Below the pieces are notes generated by a model. That model was not told the DNA's origin and made no database searches. It saw nothing but the letters and a program-made list of their open reading frames with translations. Shown piece after piece: positions 18,103 to 60,445 of a DNA stretch of 64,000 bases. The stretch lies in IMG/VR virus record IMGVR_UViG_3300023199_000204, positions 186,001 to 250,000 of that record; one strand, 5' to 3'. Made by a program: the position numbers and the translations under genes. Each line of letters begins with the position of its first letter. Positions within the stretch are counted from its first letter, which is position 1.

Positions 18103-18513
18103 ATGAATAGAAATGAAAGGCTTCTTATGAGAGCCTTTAATAAAAGTATAGAATCAAATCATCCAATATTTCCTATGGGAGCAATTCTTGCTCAGGGAAA
18201 TAGAATAATCTCTTATGGAACCAACAAGCACGGCTGTACTCATCCAAAACAAAAGGTGAGAACAAATAGCCTTGGAATGGAATATGGAAGGCATTTTCCT
18301 CACGCAGAACTAATATGTTTACTCGCCGCTCCAAAGAATAAGAGAATAGGATCAACAATCTATGTTGCTCGCAGATTAAATAAGGGAGGAACTGGAATGG
18401 CAAAGCCTTGTCAACATTGTCATACCTACCTTCTTAACGAAGGTGTCAAAAAAGTAGTTTATACGGTTAAATCAGAAGACTTCACTAATTGGTATAATGA
18501 TTATTACCTCTGA
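18103..18513 (+). CDS. Zn-dependent cytidine/dCMP deaminase-fold protein
   Basis: HAE (HAELICL) and PCxxC (KPCQHC) motifs. Confidence 0.8.
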   Translation: MNRNERLLMRAFNKSIESNHPIFPMGAILAQGNRIISYGTNKHGCTHPKQKVRTNSLGMEYGRHFPHAELICLLAAPKNKRIGSTIYVARRLNKGGTGMAKPCQHCHTYLLNEGVKKVVYTVKSEDFTNWYNDYYL

Positions 18514-19651
18514 GGAAAAAATGTGGGAATTAAAAAACGGTAGAACTAAGCTTAATATATCTAAAATAAGAAAAACTTTTAAAGTAATAGAAGACGATGA
18601 CTTAAAATTAATTATTCCACAAAAAAATATGTGGGATTGGGAAGACGAAGAGAAATTTCTTCGCTCAATTATAGTGGATAAGAATGGTTATGTAGTTTCT
18701 TCTGGTTGGCCCAAATTTGGAAACTATGGTGAATTTATTCAAGATACAGAGGTTTTAAATAATGCTCTTCAAAATGATGATAAAATAAATTTTACTATGA
18801 AAGAGGACGGAAGTCTTTGTATTAGATCAGTAATTAATGACAAAGTAGTTCTTAGAACTCGTGGTACAATGTATGGGGGAGACTATGACGAGGAAGGAAA
18901 TCCCCCTTTTAGGGTAAAGTTTACTCAAGTTGCCGAGACGAAGTATCCTAAAATATTAGATCCAAATTGGATGAAAGACAGGTCTTTATTATTTGAATAT
19001 GTCTCTCCAGAAAATAGAATAGTTGTAGGATATTCAAAAGAAGATTTAGTTTTTATTGGATCGATTAGACACTCTGACTTAAAAATAGGTTCTTGGAATG
19101 AGCTTCAAAAAATAGCGGAAGAGGGAAAGCTTAACCTAGTTAAACTTCATAACCTTCCGCTAGAAGTGTCTGAGCTTCTTGAAAAAATTAAAAATTGGGA
19201 AGATGAAGGAATTGTCGCCAGAGTTAATAATGGAGAAGTTCTTGTTAAAATTAAAAGTGCTTCCTATTTGGCAAGGCATAGGTTAAAATCAAATCTTAAT
19301 TATAAATTTATATGTGAGTTTATTGAAATGTCTTTACCAAAAAACAAAGATGATTTAGAAAATCAGCTTTGTCAAATGGGAATGGATTTTGAAACAGTTT
19401 CAGAAGCAATTAAAATATATGATTTATATTGTCAAGCAGAAAATGAAACCCAAGAGGCTTTAAATGAAGCAATAAAACTATATGAATCGTTTTCATCTAA
19501 AGAAACAGATCCAAGATTGATTAGAAAAGACTACGCTATGATTGCTACCAAAGCTCCGTTTCCAACAAGAACATTTATGTTTTTACTTTATGATAATAAA
19601 CAACAGAAACTTAAAGATTTTTACAAAAAAGTCGTTTGGACTAAGCATTAG
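18497..19651 (+). CDS. T4 Rnl1-like RNA ligase
   Basis: PKFGN, motif I KEDGSL, FEYVSPENRIV, EGIV and KIKS motifs. Confidence 0.8.
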   Translation: MIITSEEKMWELKNGRTKLNISKIRKTFKVIEDDDLKLIIPQKNMWDWEDEEKFLRSIIVDKNGYVVSSGWPKFGNYGEFIQDTEVLNNALQNDDKINFTMKEDGSLCIRSVINDKVVLRTRGTMYGGDYDEEGNPPFRVKFTQVAETKYPKILDPNWMKDRSLLFEYVSPENRIVVGYSKEDLVFIGSIRHSDLKIGSWNELQKIAEEGKLNLVKLHNLPLEVSELLEKIKNWEDEGIVARVNNGEVLVKIKSASYLARHRLKSNLNYKFICEFIEMSLPKNKDDLENQLCQMGMDFETVSEAIKIYDLYCQAENETQEALNEAIKLYESFSSKETDPRLIRKDYAMIATKAPFPTRTFMFLLYDNKQQKLKDFYKKVVWTKH

Positions 19652-25959: not shown

Positions 25960-26487
25960 ATGAATATAGATGTGGAATTTTTAGAAAGAGCTAAATGGTT
26001 TGCTACTATAATTCATCACGGCCAGCAATATGGTAATAAACCATATATTCATCATCTTGAACAGGTAGAATGTGTAATTTCAAGGTTTAATTTTGATGAC
26101 TTAGAATTAAGAGTAGCGGCTTGGCTTCACGATAGTATTGAAGATGTTGAAGGCATTGATTATAAAAAAATAAAACTAGGATTTGGAACAGAAATTGCTG
26201 ATATAGTTTTTTGCGTTACTAATCAGATAGGTAGAGATAGAAAAGAAAAATTTAAATATACTTATCCTAAAATAAAAGAAAATAGAAAGGCATTAATTGT
26301 TAAATTAGCAGACAGAATTGCTAATATTGAAAATGGAATGGGATATAGGACAGGGTATGTTAATATGTATAAAAAAGAATGGCCTGAATTCTATGAAGCT
26401 CTTTATGATAAAGAAGAAACTGATGAGCGTGTAATTAAAATGTGGAACTATCTTAAATCTTTATTTGAAGAATTTAAAAATGGATAA
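25960..26487 (+). CDS. Stand-alone RelA/SpoT-type HD hydrolase (Mesh1/SAH-like)
   Basis: HHGQQYGNKPYIHHL, AAWLHDSIED and VKLADRIAN. Confidence 0.8.
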   Translation: MNIDVEFLERAKWFATIIHHGQQYGNKPYIHHLEQVECVISRFNFDDLELRVAAWLHDSIEDVEGIDYKKIKLGFGTEIADIVFCVTNQIGRDRKEKFKYTYPKIKENRKALIVKLADRIANIENGMGYRTGYVNMYKKEWPEFYEALYDKEETDERVIKMWNYLKSLFEEFKNG

Positions 26488-27412
26488 AACATCACTCAGC
26501 GATAGAATGAAGAGTTATGAAAGCCTTTATAACTTAAAGATTATGAATAGGCTTCCAGTTATAATTAGATTAGATGGAAAGAACTTTTCTTCACTCACTA
26601 AAAAACATAAATTTACTAAACCATTTTCTAATATATTCGCAAATATGATAATTAATACTATGATTAATGTTGCTAGAAATATTCAAGGTTGTTTAGTAGG
26701 TTATACTCAATCGGATGAAATCACATTAGTCTTAAGAAATGATCAGTCGTTGGAATCAACTCCTTGGTTTGGTAATCGCATACAAAAAATGTGTAGCATT
26801 TTAGCAAGTTTAGCAGCCGCAAGTTTTAACTCACTATTAATTTCACAAGGTTTTATAGAAGGATTTAATCTTGAGAAAAATAAACTTGTTTGTTTTGACT
26901 CACGAGTGTTTGCTGTTCCATCTATAACTGAAGCTTTGAATAATTTAATATGGCGACAGAATGATTGTGTAAAGAATTCAATAAGCTCAGTAACTTATTA
27001 TGAAATTGCTAAATTAGATGACTATGAAAAGGGAAAAACAAGAAAGATGATGTTCGGTCTTAATCAAAAGCAACAACAAGATTTATCGTTTAAGACAGCG
27101 GGAATTAATTGGAATAATTATGAAGCAAAATATAAGAGAGGAACCGTTACCTTTAAAGAAAATTTTAAAAGTAAAGTTATACCAAAGTTTAAGAATGGTA
27201 TTCCTGAAGATAAAAGGTGCCCTGACTGTTTAAATATTAATCCTGATATTCTATGTTTTACTTGTGGAGGAACTGATATAAAACCAATAGAGGTTGTTAG
27301 AACAAGATGGAAAACAGAACCAGCTCCTATCTTTACTTCAGAAGAGGGCAAGAGTTGGCTTTCTAATGTTATTTCTTTAGAGAAAAAAAAATGGCGAAGA
27401 ATAAAAAAATAG
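26480..27412 (+). CDS. tRNA(His) guanylyltransferase Thg1-like protein
   Basis: DRMKSYE, IRLDGKNFS, YTQSDEIT, FDSRVF, WRQNDCVKNSI and KRGT motifs. Confidence 0.9.
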   Translation: MDKTSLSDRMKSYESLYNLKIMNRLPVIIRLDGKNFSSLTKKHKFTKPFSNIFANMIINTMINVARNIQGCLVGYTQSDEITLVLRNDQSLESTPWFGNRIQKMCSILASLAAASFNSLLISQGFIEGFNLEKNKLVCFDSRVFAVPSITEALNNLIWRQNDCVKNSISSVTYYEIAKLDDYEKGKTRKMMFGLNQKQQQDLSFKTAGINWNNYEAKYKRGTVTFKENFKSKVIPKFKNGIPEDKRCPDCLNINPDILCFTCGGTDIKPIEVVRTRWKTEPAPIFTSEEGKSWLSNVISLEKKKWRRIKK

Positions 27413-28395: not shown

Positions 28396-29754
28396 ATGAA
28401 CATACAAAAGTTATTTAATTTATTTAAAGAAAATAATAAAGAACTATATCAAGTTGGAGGCTCAGTAAGAGATTTTTTAATGAAAACGCCTACTAAAGAT
28501 TTAGATTTTGCCACAAATTCCTTACCTGAAGAAATTGAAAGGATATTGGAACTTAGCAATTTAAAACATTAGCCAATAGGTAAAAAGTTTGGGACGATCG
28601 CAACAAAAATAGAAGGCGAGCAGGTAGAGATTACAACTTATCGTAAAGATAAAACTTCTGGAAGGCATCCAGAAGTTCAGTTTTCTTTATCTTTAAAGGA
28701 AGATTTAGAACGGAGAGATTTTACTATTAATTCAATCGCTATGGATTTTGATGGGAACATAGTTGATCCCTTTAACGGAAAACAAGATATTAAAAGCAAA
28801 ATAATTCGGGCAACTGGTGATCCTAAAATTAGATTTTCTGAGGATCCATTAAGAATGCTTAGAGCAGTAAGATTTGTATCAAAGCTTGGTTTTAACATAG
28901 AAGGTAAGACTAAAGAGTCCATCTATAACAATGCTCACTCAATACTTTCTGTAAGCAGAGAGCGTTGGTGCGAGGAATTTAATAAGTTATTAATGGGGTC
29001 TCACGTAGAAAAAGGATTAGAAGTCCTAAAACAAACTAGGTTGCTTTCTTTAATGATTCCAGAGTTTCAGCCAGTTTTAATGACGGACCCAAATGCTTTT
29101 CTACCAAGCAAAAACTTGTGGTTTCATACAAAAAAAGTTGTATCACAGTGTAGTAAAAAATTACCAGTATTGTGGGCAGGGTTGCTACACGATATAGCTA
29201 AACCATAGACCCGATATGAGATTGGAAAGAATGTAAGATTTTTTGAACACGAAACTATTGGAGCAGAGCTTACCAATAATATCTGTAGAAGATTGAAGAT
29301 GAGTAATGAATCTAGAAAAACTATAGTTTCTTTAGTAGCTCTTCATCAAAGAGTTAGCGATGTTGTTTCAAGAAAATACAATCCGCCAGTTCGCAAATGT
29401 GGATTAAGAAGGCTTCTTAAGGAGTGTAGAGAAGGAAGATGTGCTCTTAATGATTTAATTGATTTGTTTGAAGCAGACTGTTCTTCTTCAATTGATGAGG
29501 TGAAGAAAAGACAAAAAGCTCACGCCTTTTTACTTAGGGAGGCAACTAAAGATCTTCTTGAGAAAGAACAAGAGCCCAGGCTTCCAACGGGAACTGGAAA
29601 TGCTATTATAGAAATATTGGGTTTGTCTGGATTAGAAGTTGGCAAAGTAATGCTTGAATTAGAAAACCTTCTTTTGAGTGGAGAAATAAATGGAAAGATG
29701 GAGCCAAAGGAAATTGTTGAGTTCTACAATCGTGAACACTACAAAAAAAATTGA
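28396..29754 (+). CDS. cca: CCA tRNA nucleotidyltransferase with HD domain; two in-frame TAG (28570, 29206)
   Basis: QVGGSVRD, KDLDFAT, RRDFTIN, EDPLRMLRAVRF, SRER and LLHDIAKP all in one frame, spanning three track fragments. Confidence 0.88.
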
Positions 29755-32096: not shown

Positions 32097-32672
32097 ATGA
32101 TTAATTATATTATTGGTGATGCCACAACTCCTATTAAAACTAGTGGTTTAAGAATTATAGCACATGTATGTAATAATAAATTCGGATGGGGATCTGGATT
32201 TGTAGTTGCCCTATCTAAAAAATGGAATAAACCTGAACAATGGTATAGGGAATGGGGAAAAGAATTAAATAAAAAACATAAAGAAGGTTGCTTTGGTAAT
32301 GAAATAATATTAGATCGATATATACTTGGTCGTATTCAAATGGTTCCAGTAAAAGATGAGCACGGTATAATTTATGTTGCTAATATGATTGCGCAAGATG
32401 GTTTCTCATCACAGAAAAATCCTGTAGCACTTAATTATTCTGCGTTAAAAATTTGCTTAATAAAGTTAAGGGATTGGATAGAAAATTACAAAGAGCTTAC
32501 AAAATATGTATCTAAATATTCGGTTCCTTTAGAGAATAAACTGGAAGTCTCTGTTAATATGCCGAGAATAGGTTGTGGTTTGGGAGGCGGAGATTGGAAA
32601 TTAGTGTCTGAAATTATAGAAGAATATATTTGTAATAATACTTTTGTTTATGATTTACCGGAGAAAAAATAG
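32097..32672 (+). CDS. Macrodomain (ADP-ribose processing) protein
   Basis: IGDAT, IIAHVCNN...WGSGFV, VANMIAQ and MPRIGCGLGGGDW. Confidence 0.88.
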   Translation: MINYIIGDATTPIKTSGLRIIAHVCNNKFGWGSGFVVALSKKWNKPEQWYREWGKELNKKHKEGCFGNEIILDRYILGRIQMVPVKDEHGIIYVANMIAQDGFSSQKNPVALNYSALKICLIKLRDWIENYKELTKYVSKYSVPLENKLEVSVNMPRIGCGLGGGDWKLVSEIIEEYICNNTFVYDLPEKK

Positions 32673-33294: not shown

Positions 33295-33906
33295 ATGAAA
33301 ACATATCCGAGCATAATAAGGACGGTGAGCCACCCTCCTAATCTTAAACTTTATACATTTGATAAACTTGACGGAAGTAATTTACGTTTTGAATGTAGTA
33401 AGAAAGCGGGATGGTATAAGTTCGGAACAAGAAATAGATTGTTCGATAAGACAGATGATATATTTGGACCAGCAACTCCACTGTTTAAAGACACATTGGC
33501 TGATGAATTAGAAAAAATATTAATTAAAAGTAGATGGAAAAGTGCTGTAATCTTTTGTGAATTTTATGGAGAGTCAAGTTTTGCTGGAAAGCACAATCTT
33601 AATGAACTAAAGAAATTAACTGTGATAGATGTAGCTCCATATAAAAAAGGCATATTGCCTCCTAAGCAATTCATTGATTTATTTGGAGAATATGGTCCAA
33701 AATATTTTGGAATTATAAATTGGGGAAAAGAATTTATAACTGAAGTTTGGAATAATAAGATAGAAGGAATGACTTTTGAGGGCGTAGTTGGTAAAACTGA
33801 AAAGAAAAGAAAGCTTTTAATGTATAAAGCTAAAACTCAACAGTGGATTGATAAAGTTAGAGCATTGTATTCTGCCAATGAAGCTACTAAATTAATAGAG
33901 AGCTGA
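33295..33906 (+). CDS. ATP-dependent RNA ligase-like nucleotidyltransferase (Rnl2-like core)
   Basis: Motif I FDKLDGSN, then FCEFYG, EGVVGK and YKAK. Confidence 0.7.
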   Translation: MKTYPSIIRTVSHPPNLKLYTFDKLDGSNLRFECSKKAGWYKFGTRNRLFDKTDDIFGPATPLFKDTLADELEKILIKSRWKSAVIFCEFYGESSFAGKHNLNELKKLTVIDVAPYKKGILPPKQFIDLFGEYGPKYFGIINWGKEFITEVWNNKIEGMTFEGVVGKTEKKRKLLMYKAKTQQWIDKVRALYSANEATKLIES

Positions 33907-34558
33907 TATGAAAATTTATACACTTATAATTCATAACGGATATGTAGAAGATAGTTCAGTTTATGCTATGATTCTTCACAATGAGATCGGATTTCCTACC
34001 CTAGAATCTGCTTTAAAAAATCTATCAAAGTCAATAATAGAGGGATTTGAATATAATATAAATATAGGATATGATAAAGATGGTTTTAAAACACGCGTTA
34101 AAAATCCTTGTTGTAAACTTTTATTAAAGAAAAGAAACAAAGAAAAAGTATATTGTTCAAAGTGTGGTAGTAAGATCTATAAAAATGATACTTCGCTTGA
34201 ATATTATGTGGTTGAAGATTATATGTTAAGATTTTTATGTTCAAATCTCAATGATTTAGCCAATTGTTATGAAACGTTAGAGTATAATGGATGGAGCTTT
34301 GGAGCAACTTTGTTTAGTAATAATTACCCAAAACATAATTTATTTAATAAAGGGGCGACAGTTCTGATTCACGAAAGAGGAGAGGAATTATTAGCGAAAG
34401 CTTATCTAGATGAACTTAATATGTATGTGGCAGAAGACAGCCCGTGGAATTTACAAACTCAATCAACTATTTTAGGAAATAAGAAAATTAAATATTATGA
34501 TTAAACCAAGGTATGTAGCAACAATTATAGCCACGATAGTATATTTATTGGTGTATTA

Positions 34559-35476
34559 ATGGAAGATTTTAAAGTATCTGCGGGCTCTGTAATAGGAAAA
34601 TATCATTTAAAAACTAATAAAAATAATCAAGATAGCTACCAATACTATTCTGACAATGATAAAATTATAGCTGTTGTTTGTGATGGCTGTGGAAGTGCCC
34701 CCTATAGTGAAGTAGGTGCTAACTTGGGAGCTAAATTACTTCTAAATAGATTAAAAGAAAGAAACTTTTGGTCGTGTTCAGGAAACCAGTTAAAAGTTCT
34801 TAAACAAATTAGAAAAGTAAGAAATGATGTGATAAAAGATATATTATCATTTGTAGATATAATGATATATGATGAAGAGTTAGCATCTATCATTCAAGAT
34901 TATTTTTTATTTACCTCTGTATGTGCTGTTGTGTGTAAAAACTACTCTTATATATTTTCTATAGGGGATGGCTACTATGGTATTAATGGTGAGACAACAT
35001 CTCTTGGTCCATTTGAAAATAACGCCCCACCATATATCTCATACTATTTAATTAGAGATAAACTTATAGAAGACGATCCAAGTTTTTATTCATTTAAGCT
35101 TAATAAAATAATTAAAACTGAGGGAGTTGATTCAATTCTTCTTGGAACAGATGGTGTAGAAGATATTATATCTAATGAAGATAGAAATATTCCTGGAAAG
35201 AAAGATAAAATTGGTGGTATAGAACAATTTTATGACTTCAAATATGTCAAAAATAGTCAGGCAATAACAAGAAGACTTAATATAATTAATAAAAATTCCT
35301 ATAAGGTTGGGGGAGACCCCGCAATTCTCCTTTTAGAAAACGGTCCATTAGGAGATGATACAACCATTCTTGTTATTCATAGATATAACTCTGCTTTTAA
35401 AATAAAAAGGACAAGTGATGAAAGTTTATCTGAAGGGTCGGGGAATAAATCTGAAACCGACTCAATCAGTAGGTAA
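34559..35476 (+). CDS. PP2C-like Ser/Thr phosphatase (TerY-P type)
   Basis: GSVIGKYH...NQDS, VCDGCGSA...GA, IGDG, LGTDGV and GDDTT. Confidence 0.85.
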   Translation: MEDFKVSAGSVIGKYHLKTNKNNQDSYQYYSDNDKIIAVVCDGCGSAPYSEVGANLGAKLLLNRLKERNFWSCSGNQLKVLKQIRKVRNDVIKDILSFVDIMIYDEELASIIQDYFLFTSVCAVVCKNYSYIFSIGDGYYGINGETTSLGPFENNAPPYISYYLIRDKLIEDDPSFYSFKLNKIIKTEGVDSILLGTDGVEDIISNEDRNIPGKKDKIGGIEQFYDFKYVKNSQAITRRLNIINKNSYKVGGDPAILLLENGPLGDDTTILVIHRYNSAFKIKRTSDESLSEGSGNKSETDSISR

Positions 35477-36062
35477 GGGAGGCGAGGTAGAGGTTTTTGA
35501 TATAGGAAAAGGTTTAGTTGCGAAGGTTTTTAAAAATAAAAATCACAAAGATTTTTTAGGTTTGCCATAAGAACAAGCCGCCGCCGAAGCAAGAATTGAT
35601 GAACATCAGAAGAAACTTCCTGACTTTCCCAAACCTTTGCCTCAAAATATCATATCCCCAGTAGATTTTTTGACAACAAGGTCGGGAAAAATCTGTGGAT
35701 ATACTATGAAGTTCATAAAAAATACAGAAGTTATATTAAGATACGCAGACAAAGGGTTTAGAAATTCAGGAGTATCTGATCAAGTAGTGGTTGATGCTTT
35801 TAAAAACATACATTCTACTTTAAAAAACCTTCACGATAAAGATGTAATAGTTGGTGATTTTAATGATCTTAATATTTTAGTAGACGGGTCTCAAGCATAT
35901 TTTATTGACACTGATAGTTATCAGTATAAGAATTATCTTTGTAGAGTATTTACTGAGAAATTTGTAGATCCATTACTATGTGATCCTACGCAAAGCAGAC
36001 CAGTTTTGATCAAATATCATAATAAAGATGGCGATTGGTATTCATTTAACTGTTCTTGCTAA
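35418..36062 (+). pseudogene. Ser/Thr protein kinase with internal TAA (35568) and C-terminal truncation
   Basis: GKGGE loop, VAKVF, IVGDFNDLNILV, FIDTDSY and DWYSF, after which the frame dies within 4 codons. Confidence 0.78.
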
Positions 36063-36447
36063 AACAAAAGAGTTTGCGGACAATGGAGTTCCTGTAAGAA
36101 CTGTTACTCTTATTTTAACTGATGGAGCGGACTGTGCTTCAATTAAATCTCGCGAGAAAGACGTAGCGTCAGTAGTCAAAGATATGCTTCGAACGGAGAA
36201 TCATATTGTTGCTGCTATGGGTCTTGACGGAGGTGGGGTTAATTTTGAGAATGTCTTTTCAGATATGGGAATCCCAAAGGAATGGGTATTAACTCCAAAA
36301 AATAATGAAAGTGATATTCGTAGAGCCTTTGCTGTGTTTTCACAATCTGCCGTTCAGGCAAGCCAGAGTGCTTTGACTTTCTCAAAGACGGCTATTGGTG
36401 GTTTTTGGCTCATAGATGGTTATCATTCTAAAGTACTAAATGGTTAA
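36046..36447 (+). pseudogene. C-terminal fragment of a vWA (TerY-like) protein
   Basis: VTLILTDGAD and IVAAMG strands are present. The N-terminal DxSxS MIDAS strand and a plausible start are absent. Confidence 0.6.
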
Positions 36448-36517
36448 TGTTTTTAGGTTCCATCTAGATGCCCAATTATAATTTAGGTGGAACTTATAAA
36501 AGATTAAATGTGTAATT

Positions 36518-37693
36518 ATGGAATTTGAAATAAACGACAGACTATTATTTCTGACGATTCACGGAAGTCACGCTTATGGAATGGCTAGACCTGAAAGTGA
36601 TATTGATATTAAAGGCTTAGGTGTTGCCCCTAGAAATTATTATTATTCTTTCTTTAAAAATTTTGAACAATATGAAGGAGAACTTTCTTTAAGGGATGAG
36701 TGTAAGCAACGACTTGAAGCGACAATTGGTCGTAGTATTAAATCAAATGAAAAGTTAGACTCGGTTATATACAATATTACTAAGTTTTTTAAATTAGCAT
36801 CTCAATGTAATCCAAACATTATTGAGGTATTGTTTGTTGATGATGAATCAATTCTATATTCTCATAAGATTATGGAAATGATTATAAATAATAGAGATTT
36901 ATTTCTATCTATGAAGGCGAACTTTAGGTTTCGTGGGTATGCTTTTTCTCAACTTAAAAGGATAAAACGTCATAGGCGTTGGTTATTAAATCCTATAGAA
37001 AGCAACCCAACTAGAGAAGATTATGGATTGCCACAAAGAACTGTTATGCCTGCGGACCAACTACAAGCAGCAGAATCTCTCATTCAAAAGAAAGTAGATG
37101 AATGGATTTTTGAACAGGAAGATATGACTCCAGAGCTTCTTAGTCTTGTAAGAAAAAGAACTATTAAATCTTTTAAAGAAGCTTTTACAGGTCTTGGTAT
37201 AAATAATATTACTGATGAATATGAAGATCTCAATAAGGCAAAACTTTCAAGAGGTGCGGGGAAGCTCCTAGGATATAGTGATAATTTTCTCGATCTTTTA
37301 GATAGCGAGCGAAGATATAAAGCACCAAAAACTGAATATAAACAATATAAAAGCTGGCAAAAGAATAGAAATCCTGTTAGAGCAGAGATGGAAGCTGAGT
37401 CAGGATTTGATCGAAAGCACGCTAGCCACCTTGTAAGGCTTATGAAAATGGCTAAAGAGATTTTATCAGAGGGAAAGGTAATAGTTAAAAGACCAGATGC
37501 TGAGGAGCTTCTTGGAATTAGAAATGGTTCAATGTCTTATGAAGAAGTTGTTAAGTGGGCAGAATTTCAAGACGGAGCAATTCAGGAAATATATGATAGT
37601 GGCTCTTCTCCTCTACCAAAAAAGCCAGATCTAAATAAGATAGATAAATTACACAAAGAAGTATTAGAAGCTGTATTTAAAGAATTTGACTAA
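36518..37693 (+). CDS. Predicted nucleotidyltransferase (RlaP/PF10127-like)
   Basis: IHGSHAYGMARPESDIDIKG, NPNIIE and KHASHLVRL. Confidence 0.8.
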   Translation: MEFEINDRLLFLTIHGSHAYGMARPESDIDIKGLGVAPRNYYYSFFKNFEQYEGELSLRDECKQRLEATIGRSIKSNEKLDSVIYNITKFFKLASQCNPNIIEVLFVDDESILYSHKIMEMIINNRDLFLSMKANFRFRGYAFSQLKRIKRHRRWLLNPIESNPTREDYGLPQRTVMPADQLQAAESLIQKKVDEWIFEQEDMTPELLSLVRKRTIKSFKEAFTGLGINNITDEYEDLNKAKLSRGAGKLLGYSDNFLDLLDSERRYKAPKTEYKQYKSWQKNRNPVRAEMEAESGFDRKHASHLVRLMKMAKEILSEGKVIVKRPDAEELLGIRNGSMSYEEVVKWAEFQDGAIQEIYDSGSSPLPKKPDLNKIDKLHKEVLEAVFKEFD

Positions 37694-39635: not shown

Positions 39636-41954
39636 GTGCTGATGGAAAAAATACAACTTCCGGTTCTTCCAATTAGAAGTCCCGATTTTCTTTTATTCCC
39701 TTGTTCTTTTGGGGATATTTATGTAGGAAGAGAATTTTCAATAGAAGCTCTAGCGTCTGCTAGAGCTAATAAAATTAATTTACTACTTGCTTTTCAAAAA
39801 GACCCTATAATTGACGAGCCAGAAATTGATGATTTACATAACATATGTGTTGAAGCAGAAATAAAAGACATTGTTAAAAACTCAACTGGTCCCGCCAGAG
39901 TTGTTTTAAGTGGTATAAAAAGAGCAGTACTTAAAGATTATTATCTTAGTGAAGGTAATTTTTATGTAGCCGATATAAAATATGTAAAGGAACCAAACTT
40001 TGAGCTAACTGATGATGATAAAGAAAAAATAAAAGTGCTTAGAGAAATTATAAGTACTTATTTTAAATCAGTAGTCATTAAAGTTAATGAAGTAAACTCT
40101 TCTGAAGATTTATCAAACTATGTAGATAATATATGTGGTCAATTATATAAGATATTTAGAACTAATAAAATACTTTTAAAACTTTTAAAAACTAAGCATC
40201 CTAGAAAAAGATTAGAAGGTTTGTTCGACATAATATCAAAAGAATCAAAATATAAAGAAGTTTCTTTTGATATGGAAAATGATTCTGAAATGGACGATGA
40301 CCATCCAGCAATAACAGATATTAAAAAGTTACATGACCAAGCGGCAGCAACCGAATTTCCTGAAGAAGTAGCAAAAGTTGTTGGGAGAGAACTTAAAAGA
40401 ATAAGAATGCTTCCACCAGGGAATGCTGAATTCCAAGTTACATATTCTTACTTAGATACTTTAATTGCTCTTCCTTGGAACAAATATACTGAAGATAAAC
40501 TAGATATAGAAGTTGCTAAAGATATATTAAATAGAGATCATTATGGAATGATAAAAGCCAAGGAAAGAATTTTAGAATTTTTGGCAGTTAAAAAATTAGT
40601 TTCTGAAAAGAAAGGTTCTATTCTCTGTTTCTGTGGTCCTCCCGGCGTAGGTAAAACTAGTATTGCCAGAAGTATAGCAGAAGCCGTTGGTAGAAAGTTT
40701 ATTAGGATGTCACTTGGTGGAATTAGTGACGAGGCAGAAATAAGAGGTCATAGAAAAACTTATATAGGGTCTATGGTTGGTAAGATAATGCAGCAGATTA
40801 AGAGAGTAGGAGTTAAGAACCCTGTATTTTTATTGGATGAGATTGATAAGATAAGCAAGAATTTTAAAGGAGACCCTGCGGCAGCATTATTAGAAGTATT
40901 AGATCCGGAACAGAATTCTACATTCGTAGATAATTATTTAGGCGTGCCTTTTGATTTATCACGAGTGATGTTCCTAGCAACTGCTAATGACATAAGTATG
41001 TTAGTCCCTGCTTTAAGAGATAGGTTGGAGATAATTGAAATATCTGGTTATTCAATTTTTGATAAAATAAAAATCGCTCAAAACTATTTACTTCCAAAAC
41101 AGCAAAAAGAAAATGGGCTTAAAGATTATGACATAACTGTTTCAGCAAAAGCGATAGAAAAAGTAATAGAAGAGTATACAAGAGAATCTGGGGTTCGTTC
41201 TTTAGAGAGAACTTGTGGAGCAATTATGAGAAAAATTGCTGTGATGGTTGCTTCAGGTAAAGATCCATATTCAATGATTAAAGCGGATATGATTCCTAAT
41301 CTACTAGGACCTCCAAAGGAATATTCAGAAAAGGCTGCCGAAAGACCAGAGATTGGGTTGTCAACTGGGCTAGCTTGGTCTGAAACAGGTGGTTCCATTT
41401 TATTTGTAGAGTGTTCTCTTAGTAATGGGAAAGGAAAAGTAATCTTAACAGGAAATTTAGGAAAAGTTATACAAGAATCAGCACAAGCTGCTTATACTTA
41501 TATAAAATCAAATTCAGAATCTCTTGGGATTGACACATCTTTAGTTGAAAACAGAGATGTTCATATTCACTTTCCAGCGGGAGCGATTCCAAAAGACGGT
41601 CCTAGTGCGGGAGTTGCTTTAGTTTCAGCAATGCTTTCTTGTTTCTTATTAAAGCCTGTTAGAAATGATATAGCAATGACTGGAGAGATAAGTTTAAGAG
41701 GAAGAGTTATGCCAATAGGTGGTTTAAGAGAGAAGGTTTTGGCAGCAGACCGAGCAGGAATAAGCACTGTATTATATCCCAAATTAAATAAATATGATTT
41801 GGAGGAAATTCCTGAAGATGTAAGGAAAAAGATGAAATTAATACAGATTTATCATATATCAGAAGCTATTGATTTGCTGTTAGTAGATGGGCAGGGGAAT
41901 GATAATAATGAATTGTCTTTACCAAGTACCCCAGTTGTTAATAGAAGTATCTAA
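39636..41954 (+). CDS. lon: ATP-dependent Lon protease
   Basis: Lon N-domain, GPPGVGKT, LLDEIDK, catalytic PKDGPSAG and IGGLREK. Confidence 0.95.
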   Translation: MLMEKIQLPVLPIRSPDFLLFPCSFGDIYVGREFSIEALASARANKINLLLAFQKDPIIDEPEIDDLHNICVEAEIKDIVKNSTGPARVVLSGIKRAVLKDYYLSEGNFYVADIKYVKEPNFELTDDDKEKIKVLREIISTYFKSVVIKVNEVNSSEDLSNYVDNICGQLYKIFRTNKILLKLLKTKHPRKRLEGLFDIISKESKYKEVSFDMENDSEMDDDHPAITDIKKLHDQAAATEFPEEVAKVVGRELKRIRMLPPGNAEFQVTYSYLDTLIALPWNKYTEDKLDIEVAKDILNRDHYGMIKAKERILEFLAVKKLVSEKKGSILCFCGPPGVGKTSIARSIAEAVGRKFIRMSLGGISDEAEIRGHRKTYIGSMVGKIMQQIKRVGVKNPVFLLDEIDKISKNFKGDPAAALLEVLDPEQNSTFVDNYLGVPFDLSRVMFLATANDISMLVPALRDRLEIIEISGYSIFDKIKIAQNYLLPKQQKENGLKDYDITVSAKAIEKVIEEYTRESGVRSLERTCGAIMRKIAVMVASGKDPYSMIKADMIPNLLGPPKEYSEKAAERPEIGLSTGLAWSETGGSILFVECSLSNGKGKVILTGNLGKVIQESAQAAYTYIKSNSESLGIDTSLVENRDVHIHFPAGAIPKDGPSAGVALVSAMLSCFLLKPVRNDIAMTGEISLRGRVMPIGGLREKVLAADRAGISTVLYPKLNKYDLEEIPEDVRKKMKLIQIYHISEAIDLLLVDGQGNDNNELSLPSTPVVNRSI

Positions 41955-44342: not shown

Positions 44343-45140
44343 ATGAACTTAAAAAAATTAAATAAAGATGAATTTATGTCCTTAGTTTATTGTCAAGCAG
44401 ATTTTCTTAAAATATATAAAGAATGCGACAAATTAGGAATTGATGTTGAAAATGTTATTATGCCAATTCAAAAAAGGAATTTATATTCTGCCAATGGTAA
44501 CAGAATAACTTTGTTTAATAAATTTATTAAAGCATTATTTCCTAGTTATAATTCTCCTGTAATTAATGGAGTGGAAAATATCAGCCTTAGTGCGAACAAG
44601 GAACTAAATAAATTATATTCTTATGCTTGGAATAATAGATATAGCTTTACCAGTCTAGGAGTTCCAAATTATTTAGTCTCAGCAAACAGTGAGTTTAATA
44701 ATCTTAAAAGACAGTTTAATAATCTTTATCTTTATAAAGTTAGCATTTCCACTCTAGGTCAGATAGACATAGACTTATCACAATTTAAAACCAATAATAA
44801 TTTAATAGATAATTCTATAAAATTATATAGAGACTATGGTCTTAATATTGATTATTATAATGCTAGTGATAGATACTGTTACTCAAATATAATACCAGTT
44901 ATTAAAAAATTAGCAGTTCTTTCTGAAAAAATTAAAGTAGCTTTAATAAAACTAGAAGAATTACATAAGTTTTATATATCGGAATTAAAAGAGAGGAAGA
45001 AAAAAGTTTTAGATGGTGTTATAAAAAATGCCGCACAGCAACCGAGAAGCTATAGTCCTGAACTTGATAATAGAATTAAAAACATAAAAGAGAGCGATGC
45101 TCAAAGAGCATTTGAAGAAGCACTAAGGAATACACCGTAA
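44343..45140 (+). CDS. Hypothetical protein inside the Ubl operon (with small ORF 44089..44346)
   Basis: Translationally coupled to both neighbours. No family recognised. Confidence 0.6.
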   Translation: MNLKKLNKDEFMSLVYCQADFLKIYKECDKLGIDVENVIMPIQKRNLYSANGNRITLFNKFIKALFPSYNSPVINGVENISLSANKELNKLYSYAWNNRYSFTSLGVPNYLVSANSEFNNLKRQFNNLYLYKVSISTLGQIDIDLSQFKTNNNLIDNSIKLYRDYGLNIDYYNASDRYCYSNIIPVIKKLAVLSEKIKVALIKLEELHKFYISELKERKKKVLDGVIKNAAQQPRSYSPELDNRIKNIKESDAQRAFEEALRNTP

Positions 45141-45871
45141 TGAAATTAAGTACTTTAAATAATTCAGAAGTTTTAATCAAATTAACAGCAGACTCTTCCT
45201 CTGTGGAGGTAGATTTTATAGATAAAAAAAGTGAAATAGTTACTTCGAAATCAATATCAATTGACGAATTAATTCATAGTTTAGCCTCTGGATATTCTTT
45301 CAACACTGGTCTTCTTCCCAAAGGTATAAGATCATTTTCAGGAACAAAAGACTATTATACAGTAATAGTAGAAATGCCTGCCCGCAAAAGAAAAGTTTTG
45401 GTTATGGATTATAATTCTGAATTCTCAGAAGAAGAGGACAAGTTGCTTCCATTTCCTGATATGGTTTTTCTAATCAGAGTAAATAATTCTATTGTCGAGA
45501 TGGAAAGCTGTAGGCTCTTTGCCCTTAAAAGACCTATAGCTACATATAATGATCGTTTATATAGGTTTCCTTTAGGAAATGTATATGGAAAAGAAGAATA
45601 TAACTATAAAATATGTTGGAACTCGGTTAGAATGGATCCAGTTAATGAAATAGTTGAGATTAATCAAGTAATTGACAAGTTTTTTAACAGCACTTTTAAT
45701 GGTGACTTGATAAACGATGGAGGGATTTGTTTTAACTCAATGGTAGCACAAGATTTTAGTGAATTTCATTATCATTTAGCAGAATTAGATACGTTTCCAA
45801 TAAATACTTTAGTAGAGACAGATTTAACAATAAGAGATTTAATAGAAAAAGATTTGAATGGAGATTATTAA
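45140..45871 (+). CDS. Prokaryotic E2-like protein (family D / PRTRC protein B-like)
   Basis: LPFPDMVFL...LFAL...LYRFPLGNVY...ICW, with a candidate catalytic Cys in ICW. Confidence 0.7.
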   Translation: MKLSTLNNSEVLIKLTADSSSVEVDFIDKKSEIVTSKSISIDELIHSLASGYSFNTGLLPKGIRSFSGTKDYYTVIVEMPARKRKVLVMDYNSEFSEEEDKLLPFPDMVFLIRVNNSIVEMESCRLFALKRPIATYNDRLYRFPLGNVYGKEEYNYKICWNSVRMDPVNEIVEINQVIDKFFNSTFNGDLINDGGICFNSMVAQDFSEFHYHLAELDTFPINTLVETDLTIRDLIEKDLNGDY

Positions 45872-45873
45872 AA

Positions 45874-46980
45874 ATGGGAAAAAGAAAAAAGAATAAAAGG
45901 ACACGAAGTCATTCTTCAAATGATGTTACTCAAGGTAACAAAAGAGCTATTATAGTAAAAAATGGCAAAAGCTGCTACGGGCAAAATACTAATCATAGTA
46001 AGAAGCTTTCTGAAGAGGATAAAAAGAAAATGGTTTCTCTACAAAAAATGATGGTTGGTCATTATGTAGAAAATATACCCGAAGATGCTCCAAAAAAAAT
46101 TAATTATGTTCTACAGGGCAATGGTGTTTATGAGAAAAGAGAAAACGATATTGGAGTTTTTATAAGAAAGGTGTCCGCGACACAAGTTCCTGGACTATAC
46201 TCTCCTATTACAGAGGGCTGGAGTCTTAAAGTTCCATTAATACCAGCAGAACTTCTTTGTAAAGCAATTTCTTTTTTCAGAAAAATTTGTAAAACTATGA
46301 ATGAGAGTGAAGTGTTTCTTCAGTTCTTTTTTGATAAGACGAAAGAGGAGTATTTCATACATTGTCCTAAACAAAAAGTTGGAAAAGGTTCTGTAGAGTA
46401 TGAAAATGATGATGTGTATAGAGACTCAAATAATATTTTAGTATTTGAAATCCATAGCCATAATACTATGGACGCGTTCTTTTCAACTACCGATGACGGT
46501 GATGAAAAAGAGGATAGGTTTTATGGGGTTGTTGGAAAACTTAATGAGCATATGCCAACAATTAAATTACGCGGAGTCTTTGCTGGCAAAGAGACTGAAA
46601 TAAAAGTAGAAGATATTTTCGATCTAAGTGGAGACCAATATCATAGTCTAGAATTCCCTAAAGAATGGGAAAATAATGTTACTGTTGCGAATTATTCCGA
46701 GTCTTATAGAGGTTTCTTTTCGTCAGAAAGTAGGAATAGATGGTTTGATAAGGATGATGATGAAACTAAAAAGGAAAGTAAAGAATCTAATTTTGATTTG
46801 GTTGTTTATAATGGGGGACAAGGAAGTGTTCCAGGAAACACTGATAAACCTAAACCTAAATCTAAACTAGATGAAGAAATTCAAGCCATTATGAGTAAAT
46901 ATTATCGTGAGCCATCACAAGATAATGACGACGATAATGATGTAAATGAACTATATAGAAGAGGATATTTCTGGGAGTAA
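45874..46980 (+). CDS. JAB/MPN metallopeptidase (PRTRC protein A-like) with acidic tail
   Basis: E (NESEV) plus EIHSH-x7-S-x2-D (EIHSHNTMDAFFSTTDD). Confidence 0.85.
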   Translation: MGKRKKNKRTRSHSSNDVTQGNKRAIIVKNGKSCYGQNTNHSKKLSEEDKKKMVSLQKMMVGHYVENIPEDAPKKINYVLQGNGVYEKRENDIGVFIRKVSATQVPGLYSPITEGWSLKVPLIPAELLCKAISFFRKICKTMNESEVFLQFFFDKTKEEYFIHCPKQKVGKGSVEYENDDVYRDSNNILVFEIHSHNTMDAFFSTTDDGDEKEDRFYGVVGKLNEHMPTIKLRGVFAGKETEIKVEDIFDLSGDQYHSLEFPKEWENNVTVANYSESYRGFFSSESRNRWFDKDDDETKKESKESNFDLVVYNGGQGSVPGNTDKPKPKSKLDEEIQAIMSKYYREPSQDNDDDNDVNELYRRGYFWE

Positions 46981-46981
46981 A

Positions 46982-47830
46982 ATGAATTCATTACCAAAAG
47001 TATATTATCTTAGTGGTTATAGAGCAATAACTGATATATTTTTAGTTGGTTGTGGTGGAACTGGAAGTTATGTAGCACCTCAGTTGGCAAGATTAAATTA
47101 TTTGATGGGACTGGTAGGAGTTTCCAGGAAAAGAATAATTTTTATTGATGGTGATTCAGTTGAAGAAAAGAATATATCAAGACAGAATTTTATTAAATCT
47201 GATGTAGGAAAAAATAAGGCTCAGGTTTTAGCTAAAAGATATTCATTTGCTTTTCAAAATGAAATACATTCATATTTAAAATATTTAGAATCAGAGGAAG
47301 ATTTTCTAAGAATAATTAAATCTTCTGGAAGGCCAAGCTATCCATTAATAATTGGTTGTGTAGATAATAATAAGACTCGTCACGTGATTAATAGATTTAT
47401 TCAATCTTATAATAAGTCTGTTTTTTGGGTAGACTCTGGAAATGAAGAAACTAATGGACAAGTTATTTGTAGCTTTAAACCTATTTATAATGATTCTAGA
47501 GGAATTAATCCTAGAGAGGCTGCGCCTGGATCAAAAGGAGTATTTACAACCCCTACAGTTGTTGAAGTATTTGATAATATGACAGACACTGGTAAATTTA
47601 ATTCTGAATTAAGTTGCGCAGAAGCCTCTATTAGCAATCCCCAAAATATTATGACCAATGTATCTGCTGCTAATTTGGTAGTAAATTATATAAATAAAAT
47701 CTATAAAAGGGATGATATATCTTCTCACGGAGTTATATTTACCATAAATAATACATTTCAAACAATAATTAATACTGTAGAAACTCTAGCTAAAGTTAAT
47801 CCTGAAAGACTTTGTTCCTGGGAGACCTAA
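46982..47830 (+). CDS. E1/ThiF-family Ubl-activating enzyme
   Basis: VGCGGTGS, DGDSVEEKNISRQNF, GCVDN, DSGN and LSCAE (candidate catalytic Cys). Confidence 0.9.
   Translation: MNSLPKVYYLSGYRAITDIFLVGCGGTGSYVAPQLARLNYLMGLVGVSRKRIIFIDGDSVEEKNISRQNFIKSDVGKNKAQVLAKRYSFAFQNEIHSYLKYLESEEDFLRIIKSSGRPSYPLIIGCVDNNKTRHVINRFIQSYNKSVFWVDSGNEETNGQVICSFKPIYNDSRGINPREAAPGSKGVFTTPTVVEVFDNMTDTGKFNSELSCAEASISNPQNIMTNVSAANLVVNYINKIYKRDDISSHGVIFTINNTFQTIINTVETLAKVNPERLCSWET

Positions 47831-57921: not shown

Positions 57922-60445
<2,524 letters not shown>

What the first reader, a model, noticed from the sequence alone, without database searches (positions are those of the whole stretch)
34559..36447. TerY-P-like phosphatase-kinase-vWA triad in a phage, with kinase and vWA fused by an apparent deletion
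Seen: an intact PP2C gene overlaps a kinase gene. At about 36046-36050 the kinase (DWYSF) runs directly into the middle of a vWA protein (LTVLAKT...TDG) in another frame, so the kinase C-terminus and the vWA N-terminal MIDAS strand are both missing. The kinase also has a TAA at 35568. Known: vWA+PP2C+kinase (TerY-P) triads are bacterial anti-phage modules. Inference: a captured defence module used against competing phages, or one in which the toxic kinase was inactivated while the phosphatase was kept as an antidote. A mis-assembly is equally possible.
Basis: partly seen in the sequence, partly recalled or inferred. Interest (0 to 1): 0.6.

Follow-up and report, generated by a model that had tools for sequence, protein, structure and literature searches.

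The report
Decayed phosphatase-kinase-vWA cassette in jumbo phage
A giant phage carries the wreck of a four-gene phosphorylation cassette that is intact in its relatives: a real deletion of about 3-5 kb and a stop codon killed the kinase and the vWA gene and removed a nicotinamidase-like gene, so only the phosphatase is whole.

Summary
PP2C (34559-35476) is intact. The kinase frame (35418-36047) carries TAA at 35568-70 and ends at codon 210 of about 620. One base later (36049) the C-terminal 120 of about 262 residues of a vWA protein begin, in another frame. Logan contigs from a second sample reproduce both lesions without a difference, so mis-assembly is unlikely. Over 2000 kinase relatives are listed at 605-638 aa and over 2500 vWA relatives at 257-289 aa, so these are truncations, not short forms.

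The intact state is a four-gene cassette: PP2C, then a Ser/Thr kinase with zinc ribbon and beta-propeller, then a nicotinamidase-like gene, then a MIDAS vWA protein. Ten other jumbo-phage contigs have it complete in this order. So do 5 of 201 sampled cyanobacteria (PP2C found in 4 of the 5) and a Patescibacteria MAG. It often lies beside NAD genes (NrtR, NadD, NadE, NAD kinase, macro). The deletion corresponds to 2.7-4.7 kb.

The architecture resembles TerY-P, but PADLOC gives no TerY-P hit, there is a fourth gene, and defence is untested. Whether selection keeps the PP2C is unresolved (p about 0.08). The pseudogene itself is ordinary; the uncharacterised NAD-linked cassette is the interesting part.

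The parts
34559..35476 (+). Intact PP2C-type Ser/Thr phosphatase gene (305 aa). Its last 59 nt overlap the kinase start.
   Evidence: Pfam PP2C_2 E 1.4e-19. 415 homologues at about 36-46% identity. All 100%-conserved family residues are present (D25, D42-G43, D137-G138, D198-G199, D266-D267). It differs at 3 of 47 positions that are at least 90% conserved, within the range of intact members.
35418..36047 (+). Remnant of a Ser/Thr kinase gene: codons 1-210 of about 620. It keeps the glycine loop, the invariant Lys, the catalytic GDFNDLN motif and the DxD motif, but is interrupted by a stop.
   Evidence: 51% identical to residues 1-210/211 of the 618-aa kinase of L006, with 1 TAA inside. The 120 listed family members are 605-638 aa, 119 of them covering the whole query. 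It differs at 11 of 65 conserved positions against a maximum of 6 in 120 intact members.
35568..35570 (+). In-frame TAA nonsense codon at kinase codon 52, between the ATP-binding Lys and the catalytic loop.
   Evidence: Translation. The family has H or Q most often in this column. The codon is present without difference in X1 and X2 contigs.
36047..36049 (+). Deletion junction. The last kinase-homologous base is 36047 and the first vWA-homologous codon starts at 36049. The frame shifts by +1, and the kinase frame ends at TAA 36060-62.
   Evidence: tblastn boundaries. Bridged with 0 differences by the X1 contig (34000-37299) and by contig 7 of the second sample X2 (35705-36935). The equivalent interval in intact loci is 2.7-4.7 kb.
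36049..36447 (+). Remnant of the vWA gene: the C-terminal 120 or so of about 262 residues, starting in the middle of the helix before strand beta4. It keeps the TDG motif. It lacks strands beta1-beta3, the DxSxS MIDAS motif and the MIDAS Thr. Its C-terminus is 13 residues longer than the family's.
   Evidence: 61-64% identical to residues 142-262 of intact relatives. vWA fold of the family: AlphaFold2 model pLDDT 86, 188 PDB matches at E <= 0.001, nearly all of those listed being vWA or integrin I domains.
32097..32672 (+). Macro-like gene. It is homologous to the gene that lies inside or next to the cassette in relatives (L006/L017, L009, L023).
   Evidence: tblastn: 47% identity to the L006 gene 5040-5585. 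Weak NCBIfam DarG macrodomain hit, E 3.7e-4.

Best explanation
Window 34559-36447 is the decayed copy of a conserved four-gene cassette. The intact order is: PP2C phosphatase, then a Ser/Thr kinase with a C-terminal zinc ribbon and beta-propeller, then a nicotinamidase-like hydrolase, then a MIDAS-bearing vWA protein.

Shown:
- One deletion, equivalent to 2.7-4.7 kb in intact loci, joined kinase codon 210 to about codon 142 of the vWA gene, out of frame.
- The deletion removed the kinase's C-lobe end, zinc ribbon and propeller, the whole nicotinamidase-like gene (and whatever lay between), and the MIDAS half of the vWA domain.
- A nonsense codon (TAA, codon 52) independently kills the kinase.
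- The lesions are real features of the phage population, not assembly errors.
- Only the PP2C gene remains whole, with every catalytic residue.

Inferred:
- The intact cassette is a TerY-P-like phospho-switch. The kinase would sense something through its propeller and zinc ribbon, the vWA protein would be partner or target, and the PP2C would reset the switch.
- The switch is coupled to NAD+/ADP-ribose turnover, judging from the nicotinamidase-like gene and the NrtR, NadD, NadE and macro neighbours.
- In this phage the switch is dead. At most a stand-alone phosphatase activity survives. Whether that activity is kept by selection or is simply the part not yet hit cannot be decided from the sequence.
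For: - Boundaries and stop codon.
- No second copy of kinase, vWA or nicotinamidase-like gene in the 316-kb record.
- Reproducibility: the X1 contig spans 34000-37299 and X2 (another sample) contigs span the TAA and the junction, all with 0 differences, no alternative joints and no loose ends.
- Family lengths: 2021 kinase relatives, the 120 listed being 605-638 aa. 2532 vWA relatives, the 120 listed being 257-289 aa and mostly 260-265.
- Intact cassette in the same order: phage contigs L014, L016, L017 (=L006), L018, L019, L020, L021 (=L005), L022, L023, L024. Also cyanobacterium L011 and Patescibacteria MAG L015, and all 5 vWA-positive genomes among 201 sampled cyanobacteria, with PP2C found in 4 of the 5.
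- Domain identities: PP2C_2; vWA fold plus DxSxS/T/D MIDAS; four invariant Cys plus beta-propeller; nicotinamidase-like.
- Decay signal: the kinase remnant differs at 11 of 65 conserved sites, including the invariant A25 and S206, against a maximum of 6 in 120 intact members. The PP2C differs at 3 of 47, within the family range.
- A second broken gene, of the poly(A)-polymerase/CCA-adding family, lies 6 kb upstream.
Against: - The read evidence consists of short-read contigs from one study. X1 may be the source sample. Contigs hide minority variants, so an intact allele at low frequency cannot be excluded.
- The record may be a fragment (CheckV estimate 18%), so 'no second copy' holds only for these 316 kb.
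- The ancestral gene order in this lineage is inferred from relatives that are only about 37-66% identical. One relative (L009) has PP2C + kinase with no nicotinamidase-like or vWA gene within 5 kb, so the deleted interval could have differed.
- Overall divergence of the remnants is no greater than among intact orthologues (ratio 0.94-0.98), so the age of the lesions is poorly constrained.
- The NAD link of the intact cassette rests on gene neighbourhood only.
Confidence: 0.85

Rival explanations
1. Orphan antidote or counter-defence. After the kinase was lost, the PP2C is kept by selection because it reverses phosphorylation by kinases of the same family in the host or in co-infecting phages. 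This would resemble an antitoxin kept without its toxin. It is the reader's second inference.
For: - The PP2C is intact over 305 codons with all catalytic Asp/Gly motifs. It differs at 3 of 47 conserved sites, against 11 of 65 in the kinase remnant and 7 of 60 in the vWA remnant.
- Homologous cassettes exist in bacteria (cyanobacteria, Patescibacteria) and other jumbo phages, so target kinases are plausible.
- Precedent: in the prophage KKP module the kinases are toxic and the phosphatase is the antidote (PMC11341870).
Against: - The statistics are weak. The binomial probability of 3 or fewer changes at the remnants' rate is 0.08, and Fisher tests give 0.15-0.20.
- With one stop in 331 remnant codons, zero stops in 305 PP2C codons is expected about 40% of the time (own calculation).
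- No expression data are available, and the host is unknown.
- The PP2C is the most weakly conserved gene of the cassette (about 38% identity among relatives).
Confidence: 0.3
2. Neutral wreck. The whole cassette became dispensable in this lineage, and the PP2C is simply the part that has not yet been hit.
For: - Two independent lesions affect the same unit.
- Another broken gene lies 6 kb upstream in the same accessory island.
- The record has no NAD-salvage genes (isochorismatase, NadE, NAPRTase, NadD families), so this phage has dropped the cassette's usual partners.
- The remnants still keep most conserved residues and are no more divergent overall than intact orthologues, so the decay is recent enough for an intact neighbour to be unremarkable.
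Against: - The kinase remnant has already changed family-invariant residues, while the PP2C has changed none of its 100%-conserved ones.
- The 59-nt PP2C/kinase overlap and the PP2C reading frame are preserved.
Confidence: 0.5
3. Assembly artefact. A chimeric join or collapse created the kinase/vWA junction, and a sequencing error created the TAA.
For: - Metagenome-assembled record.
- The junction joins two unrelated genes.
- No long reads were available.
Against: - Logan's own per-run contigs reproduce the region. The X1 contig (11.4 kb) spans 34000-37299.
- In a different sample, X2 contigs span 35504-35721 and 35705-36935.
- All show 0 differences, no alternative joints and no loose ends.
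- No repeat could cause a collapse, because the two sides are unrelated sequences.
- Two independent lesions plus excess substitutions in the kinase remnant fit real decay.
Confidence: 0.03
4. Functional recoding. Stop read-through at the TAA and a +1 frameshift at 36048 yield a kinase-vWA fusion, or the short forms are natural split genes.
For: The vWA remnant keeps every residue that is invariant across the aligned family from T142 on. The kinase remnant keeps its catalytic motifs.
Against: - None of the listed family members has such an architecture or length.
- The window's other long ORFs are open under the standard code.
- The remnant lacks strands beta1-beta3 and the MIDAS motif, so it cannot form a vWA fold. 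The kinase ends inside its C-lobe.
- No other phage locus shows this arrangement.
Confidence: 0.01

Closest known systems
TerY-P triad (TerY-like vWA + PP2C + Ser/Thr kinase fused to a zinc ribbon, Anantharaman et al. 2012; OB-fold variant shown to defend against phage, Gao et al. 2020; both as described in PMC11090510 and PMC7699616)
   Same: The three domain types are the same and lie in one gene cluster. In intact relatives the kinase has a C-terminal CxxC...CxxC zinc ribbon. The vWA has a MIDAS motif. Distribution in bacteria is patchy (5 of 201 sampled cyanobacteria).
   Different: - A fourth conserved gene (nicotinamidase-like) lies between kinase and vWA.
- The kinase carries an extra beta-propeller of about 290 aa.
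- Gene order is PP2C-kinase-X-vWA.
- No TerY-P model of PADLOC matches any protein, and Pfam VWA models do not match the vWA.
- The neighbours are NAD-metabolism genes, not restriction or defence genes.
- The cassette is common in jumbo phages.
- The window's copy is broken.
KKP (kinase-kinase-phosphatase) module of Pf prophages (PMC11341870)
   Same: It is a phage-borne Ser/Thr kinase + PP2C-type phosphatase module in which the kinase is toxic and the phosphatase is the antidote. This gives a precedent for a phosphatase outliving its kinase.
   Different: KKP has two kinases, no vWA and no nicotinamidase-like gene. It sits in filamentous temperate phages of Pseudomonas. No sequence relationship was tested or seen here.
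Phage T7 protein kinase (gp0.7), which disarms bacterial defences by phosphorylation (PMC13645617)
   Same: It is a phage-encoded Ser/Thr kinase acting on host proteins during infection. This shows that phage kinases can be offensive rather than defensive.
   Different: It is a single gene with an unrelated architecture and has no phosphatase or vWA partner.
NrtR-controlled NAD salvage operons (pncA/pncB/nadD/nadE; PMC2330246)
   Same: Intact bacterial copies lie directly next to an NrtR-type Nudix regulator (L011, L015). They include a nicotinamidase-like gene. Phage copies lie next to NadD- and NadE-like genes.
   Different: The published NrtR regulons, as searched in that paper, list no kinase, phosphatase or vWA genes. 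NrtR binding sites were not searched here.

Membership tests
TerY-P triad | PP2C-type phosphatase gene in the cluster | tested here: met
   Pfam PP2C_2 E 1.4e-19 and all metal-binding Asp motifs present.
TerY-P triad | TerY-like vWA protein with MIDAS | tested here: not met
   In the window only the C-terminal 120 or so residues remain. The DxSxS motif and the MIDAS Thr are deleted. In intact relatives the fold is vWA with a MIDAS motif. A specific kinship to TerY was not shown: there is no Pfam VWA hit and no PADLOC hit.
TerY-P triad | Ser/Thr kinase fused at its C-terminus to a zinc ribbon (or OB fold) | tested here: not met
   The window's kinase stops at codon 210 and has a nonsense codon at 52. 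Intact relatives do have four invariant Cys (zinc ribbon) after the kinase domain, followed by a beta-propeller that TerY-P lacks.
TerY-P triad | Recognition by the defence-system profile library (PADLOC) | tested here: not met
   No TerY-P family matched at E <= 0.01 for the window's proteins or for the intact L003 triad. The kinases hit only PD-T4-6, MkoA and mad6, weakly. That the library contains TerY-P models is from my own knowledge, not from the output.
TerY-P triad | Protects bacteria from phage | not testable with these tools
   This needs plaque assays with the intact cassette.
Pseudogene / gene remnant | Truncated relative to a family of uniform length | tested here: met
   Kinase: 210 of about 620 codons. 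vWA: about 120 of about 262 codons.
Pseudogene / gene remnant | Lesions reproducible in independent data | tested here: met
   Contigs of the second sample (X2) cover the TAA and the junction with 0 differences. Caveats: same study, and these are contigs, not raw reads.
Pseudogene / gene remnant | Relaxed constraint on the remnant | tested here: inconclusive
   The kinase remnant differs at 11 of 65 conserved sites, against a maximum of 6 in 120 intact members. The vWA remnant differs at 7 of 60, equal to the maximum in 37. Overall identity to relatives is normal.
Kinase-toxin / phosphatase-antidote module (KKP-like) | The kinase is toxic and the phosphatase neutralises it | not testable with these tools
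   This is only an analogy from PMC11341870.
PP2C-kinase-nicotinamidase-like-vWA cassette (defined here) | Four genes adjacent in this order | tested here: not met
   The window retains gene 1 and fragments of genes 2 and 4. Gene 3 is absent from the whole record. The feature is met in 10 other phage contigs, in L011 and L015, and in 4 of the 5 vWA-positive cyanobacteria; the fifth, G026, has kinase-ISO-vWA but no PP2C match.

The most novel reading that the evidence does not exclude
The intact cassette (PP2C, kinase with zinc ribbon and beta-propeller, nicotinamidase-like enzyme, MIDAS vWA) is an undescribed NAD+/ADP-ribose-linked phospho-signalling system. It is shared by jumbo phages and a patchy minority of cyanobacteria and CPR bacteria, often next to the ADP-ribose-responsive regulator NrtR. 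This phage is a natural knock-out that kept only the phosphatase, as an orphan antidote that neutralises the homologous kinase of its host or of rival phages.
Probability: 0.2. Interest if true: 0.75.

Novelty: new variant of a known kind. Interest (0 to 1): 0.45.

Why it matters
The broken locus by itself is ordinary gene decay in the accessory region of a jumbo phage. Following it up shows three things worth knowing.

1. The apparent TerY-P triad belongs to a large four-gene family (over 2000 members) with no curated name. It is conserved in order between jumbo phages, cyanobacteria and Patescibacteria.
2. This family couples a kinase/phosphatase/vWA switch to a nicotinamidase-like enzyme and to NAD genes and the regulator NrtR. 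NAD+ depletion and NAD+ reconstitution are central themes in phage-bacterium conflict.
3. The window offers a natural allele in which only the phosphatase survives. That allele gives a simple experimental handle: does the orphan PP2C counteract the intact kinase?

If the cassette proves to sense or regulate NAD+/ADP-ribose turnover during infection, it would link protein phosphorylation to NAD-based immunity on both sides of the conflict.

Tried and rejected
- DNA-level search of the phage collection with 34000-37000 found nothing. Relatives are visible only at protein level.
- The search for related loci with the window's PP2C alone found nothing in IMG/VR. An alignment-based scan was needed.
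- The PADLOC and PHROGs scans gave no informative family for the PP2C, vWA or kinase remnants. NCBIfam has no model for the kinase, the nicotinamidase-like protein or the vWA.
- PDB sequence searches gave no significant hit for the vWA or the kinase, and only a weak nicotinamidase hit for gene 3. The fold searches were what settled the vWA and beta-propeller assignments.
- 'Naturally short homologues' is rejected on family lengths.
- 'Second intact copy elsewhere in the genome' is rejected for the 316-kb record.
- 'Alternative genetic code reading TAA' is rejected. The rest of the window is open under the standard code, and no genome-wide signal was seen.
- I looked for a closer relative that might carry the intact allele. 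The best PP2C relative among 5.8 billion proteins is only 44% identical, so the deletion cannot be dated or its microhomology examined. For that reason the single metagenome scan was not spent.
- The Anantharaman et al. 2012 paper could not be read under the id I guessed. The definition of TerY-P is therefore taken second-hand from PMC11090510.
- Literature searches for the four-gene combination found no description. One search failed on a syntax rule.
- The promoter/terminator scan gave only consensus noise and no terminator.
- No complex prediction was run, because no binding claim is made.
Full report
**Setting**

The window is bases 186001-250000 of a 316,473-bp IMG/VR virus record. All ORFs of 120 aa or more in the window lie on the + strand. 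GC is about 30%.

The genes around the finding form an accessory island typical of jumbo phages:
- RNA repair and tRNA genes: an Rnl1-like RNA ligase, Thg1, a second RNA ligase, RlaP and metallophosphoesterases.
- A macro-like gene.
- Lon and a GroEL-like chaperonin.
- An E2/JAB/E1-like trio.
- A PARP-like gene.

**1. The observation**

- The ORF 34559-35476 encodes a 305-aa PP2C (Pfam PP2C_2, E 1.4e-19).
- The kinase starts at ATG 35418, inside the end of the PP2C gene, with a 59-nt overlap. The closest phage relative L009 also overlaps by 59 nt, and L014 by 47 nt.
- The kinase frame has TAA at 35568-35570 (codon 52) and continues in the same frame to 36062.
- Searching the phage's own record with an intact relative (the 618-aa kinase of L006) gives one match: residues 1-211, 51% identity, one TAA inside.
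- The intact 284-aa vWA ORF of L006 matches only at residues 162-282, 61% identity.
- tblastn places the kinase match at 35418-36047 and the vWA match at 36049-36405. One base separates them, and the vWA frame is +1 relative to the kinase.
- The kinase frame ends five codons after the junction. The two genes are therefore juxtaposed, not fused in frame.

**2. Real lesion or artefact?**

Three public runs of one study hold the sequence. Laying Logan's per-run contigs on 34000-37500 gave these results:
- In X1, which may be the source sample, one 11.4-kb contig covers 34000-37299 with 0 differences.
- In X2, a different sample, contig 6 covers 35504-35721 (the TAA) and contig 7 covers 35705-36935 (the junction), both with 0 differences.
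- There are no alternative joints and no loose ends.

The two sides of the junction are unrelated sequences, so a repeat collapse is not an available mechanism.

Caveats: the runs come from one study, these are contigs rather than raw reads, and minority alleles would not be seen. I put mis-assembly at about 3%.

**3. Are short forms natural?**

No.
- The kinase family has 2021 members at E <= 1e-10. The 120 best are 605-638 aa, and 119 of them cover the whole query.
- The vWA family has 2532 members at E <= 1e-5. The 120 listed are 257-289 aa, mostly 260-265, and 63-100% identical to the phage protein of L006.

**4. What the intact unit is**

Related jumbo-phage contigs carry, in the same order, PP2C, a full-length kinase, an isochorismatase-family gene and a full-length vWA gene. 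Small inserted genes sometimes lie between them.
- The contigs are L014, L016, L017 (=L006), L018, L019, L020, L021 (=L005), L022, L023 and L024. Their lengths run from 81 to 460 kb.
- A more distant pair of huge phages (L003, L025) has the cyclic permutation ISO-vWA-PP2C-kinase, with no PP2C match detected in L025.
- One relative (L009) has PP2C and an intact 607-aa kinase but no ISO or vWA within 5 kb downstream.

The same four genes, 43-66% identical to the L006 phage copies, are contiguous in bacteria:
- The cyanobacterium Argonema antarcticum (L011) and a Patescibacteria MAG (L015).
- In a sample of 201 genomes of the cyanobacterial phylum, 5 have the vWA gene. In all 5 the kinase, ISO and vWA genes are adjacent, and PP2C lies upstream in 4 of them.

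Domain assignments:
- The vWA family model (AlphaFold2, pLDDT 86) gives 188 PDB matches at E <= 0.001. Nearly all of those listed are vWA or integrin I domains. The alignment shows the MIDAS residues D61-x-S63-x-S65, T130 and D166.
- Residues 270-618 of the kinase contain four invariant Cys (a zinc ribbon) and a beta-propeller. The model has pLDDT 87, and its best matches are Ycf48, virginiamycin B lyase, BamB and Kelch.
- The third gene is nicotinamidase-like. The evidence is a weak Pfam Isochorismatase match, a weak match to an entry deposited as nicotinamidase (2wt9), and an Atlas feature score of 0.97 to 'nicotinamidase family' clusters.

Neighbours of intact copies:
- An NrtR-type Nudix regulator directly upstream in both L011 and L015.
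- NAD kinase (L015).
- NadE- and NadD-like genes (L014, L017).
- ADP-ribosylglycohydrolases (L012, L013).
- Macro-like genes (L017, L023, L009).

This neighbourhood is the basis for linking the cassette to NAD+/ADP-ribose turnover. That link is an inference.

**5. What happened in this phage**

Measured on intact loci, the interval from kinase codon 211 to about vWA codon 142 is 2.7-4.7 kb. It is 2.7 kb in L018, 2.9 kb in L011, L016 and L019, 3.2 kb in L017, 3.8 kb in L021 and L024, and 4.7 kb in L014.

The deletion removed:
- The end of the kinase C-lobe. The break is in the conserved SDWYA motif.
- The zinc ribbon and the propeller.
- The nicotinamidase-like gene.
- Strands beta1-beta3 of the vWA domain, with the DxSxS motif and the MIDAS Thr.

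The remnant begins at T142 of the family numbering, inside the helix before strand beta4.

The TAA lies in a column where the family most often has H or Q. It splits the ATP-binding Lys from the catalytic loop.

The 316-kb record holds no second copy of any of these genes. It has no Isochorismatase, NAD_synthase, NAPRTase or NadD-family match. The record may be incomplete.

A second broken gene lies 6 kb upstream, at 28396-29754. It belongs to the poly(A)-polymerase/CCA-adding family and is split over several ORFs. The head-domain ORF matches only positions 1-36 of 126.

**6. Is the PP2C kept by selection?**

I counted, leave-one-out, mismatches at columns that are at least 90% conserved in each family.

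| Gene | Window mismatches | Intact members |
|---|---|---|
| PP2C | 3 of 47 | median 1, 90th percentile 3, max 6 (119 members) |
| Kinase remnant | 11 of 65 | median 1, max 6 (120 members) |
| vWA remnant | 7 of 60 | median 1, max 7 (37 members) |

- The PP2C has lost none of its 100%-conserved positions.
- The kinase remnant has changed the family-invariant residues A25 (to V) and S206 (to G).

This pattern fits relaxed constraint on the remnants and continued constraint on the PP2C, but the contrast is not significant:
- The binomial probability of 3 or fewer changes at the remnants' rate is 0.08.
- Fisher tests give 0.15-0.20.
- Overall identity of the window's three genes to relatives equals that among relatives (ratios 0.98, 0.94 and 0.96).

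I therefore leave 'orphan antidote' (about 0.3) and 'not yet hit' (about 0.5) both open.

**7. Comparison with known systems**

TerY-P is defined as a TerY-like vWA, a PP2C and a Ser/Thr kinase fused to a C-terminal zinc ribbon. A variant with an OB fold defends against phage (PMC11090510, PMC7699616).

The intact relatives share the three domain types and the zinc ribbon. They differ in five ways:
- A fourth conserved gene.
- An added beta-propeller.
- No TerY-P hit in PADLOC.
- NAD-type rather than restriction-type neighbours.
- Frequent residence in jumbo phages.

I call this a TerY-P-like variant and do not file it as a member. The window's copy fails the vWA and kinase criteria outright because those parts are deleted.

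The KKP prophage module (PMC11341870) is a precedent for toxic kinases held in check by a phosphatase. The T7 kinase (PMC13645617) is a precedent for phage kinases used offensively. The published NrtR regulons, as searched, list no kinase, phosphatase or vWA genes. My literature searches found no description of the four-gene unit.

**8. Verdict**

It is a TerY-P-like architecture with a deletion and an intact phosphatase.
- It needs correcting on the unit (four genes, NAD-linked), on 'fusion' (out of frame), and on 'captured defence module' (untested; the cassette is a conserved jumbo-phage feature).
- The locus itself is an ordinary pseudogene. The interest lies in the uncharacterised cassette it points to, and in the natural phosphatase-only allele.

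Noticed in passing
window 54459-55946 (+): A 495-aa protein with the eukaryote-style PARP architecture (WGR + PARP regulatory + PARP catalytic domains; Pfam E 1.5e-26 for the catalytic domain). It is an NAD+-consuming enzyme, in the same phage that has lost the nicotinamidase-like gene.
   Followed up: partly
window 45140-47830 (+): Three adjacent genes match Prok-E2_D, Prok-JAB and ThiF (E1-like). Together they form a ubiquitin-like conjugation and deconjugation set in a phage.
   Followed up: partly
window 28396-29754 (+): A second broken gene. A poly(A)-polymerase/CCA-adding family gene is split into at least three ORFs. The 58-aa first ORF matches only positions 1-36 of the 126-position head domain, and the RNA-binding domain sits in a separate ORF (28741-29208).
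   Followed up: partly
window 18497-19651, 26465-27412, 33295-33906, 36518-37693 (+): A concentration of RNA-repair and tRNA-type genes around the finding: an Rnl1-like RNA ligase (phrog_562), Thg1 tRNA-His guanylyltransferase, a second RNA ligase and an RlaP nucleotidyltransferase. RlaP and an RNA ligase also occur near the cassette in relatives L014 and L009.
   Followed up: partly
window 36406-36447 (+): The vWA remnant ends ...GGFWLIDGYHSKVLNG, 13 residues longer than the family's ...GGFG(x) end. The C-terminus has drifted or the original stop was lost.
   Followed up: no
L011 6161-6856 and L015 3176-3850: In a cyanobacterium and in a Patescibacteria MAG, an NrtR-type Nudix regulator (NUDIX + WHD_NrtR) lies directly upstream of the intact four-gene cassette, divergently transcribed in L011. 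This suggests control by ADP-ribose. Operator sites were not searched.
   Followed up: no
L012 8101-10536 and L013 1-1990: In two large filamentous-cyanobacterium-type genomes, two ADP-ribosylglycohydrolase genes and an OGFr_N-domain gene lie directly upstream of the kinase. In L012 they sit between the PP2C and the kinase.
   Followed up: no
whole record (G000): CheckV completeness is given as 18% for a 316-kb linear record. Relatives reach 424-460 kb. The record is probably a fragment of a larger genome, so absence claims apply only to the 316 kb held.
   Followed up: no
window 39636-41954 and 57937-59538 (+): A full-length Lon protease (LON substrate-binding domain + AAA + Lon_C) and a GroEL-type chaperonin are encoded by the phage.
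   Followed up: no
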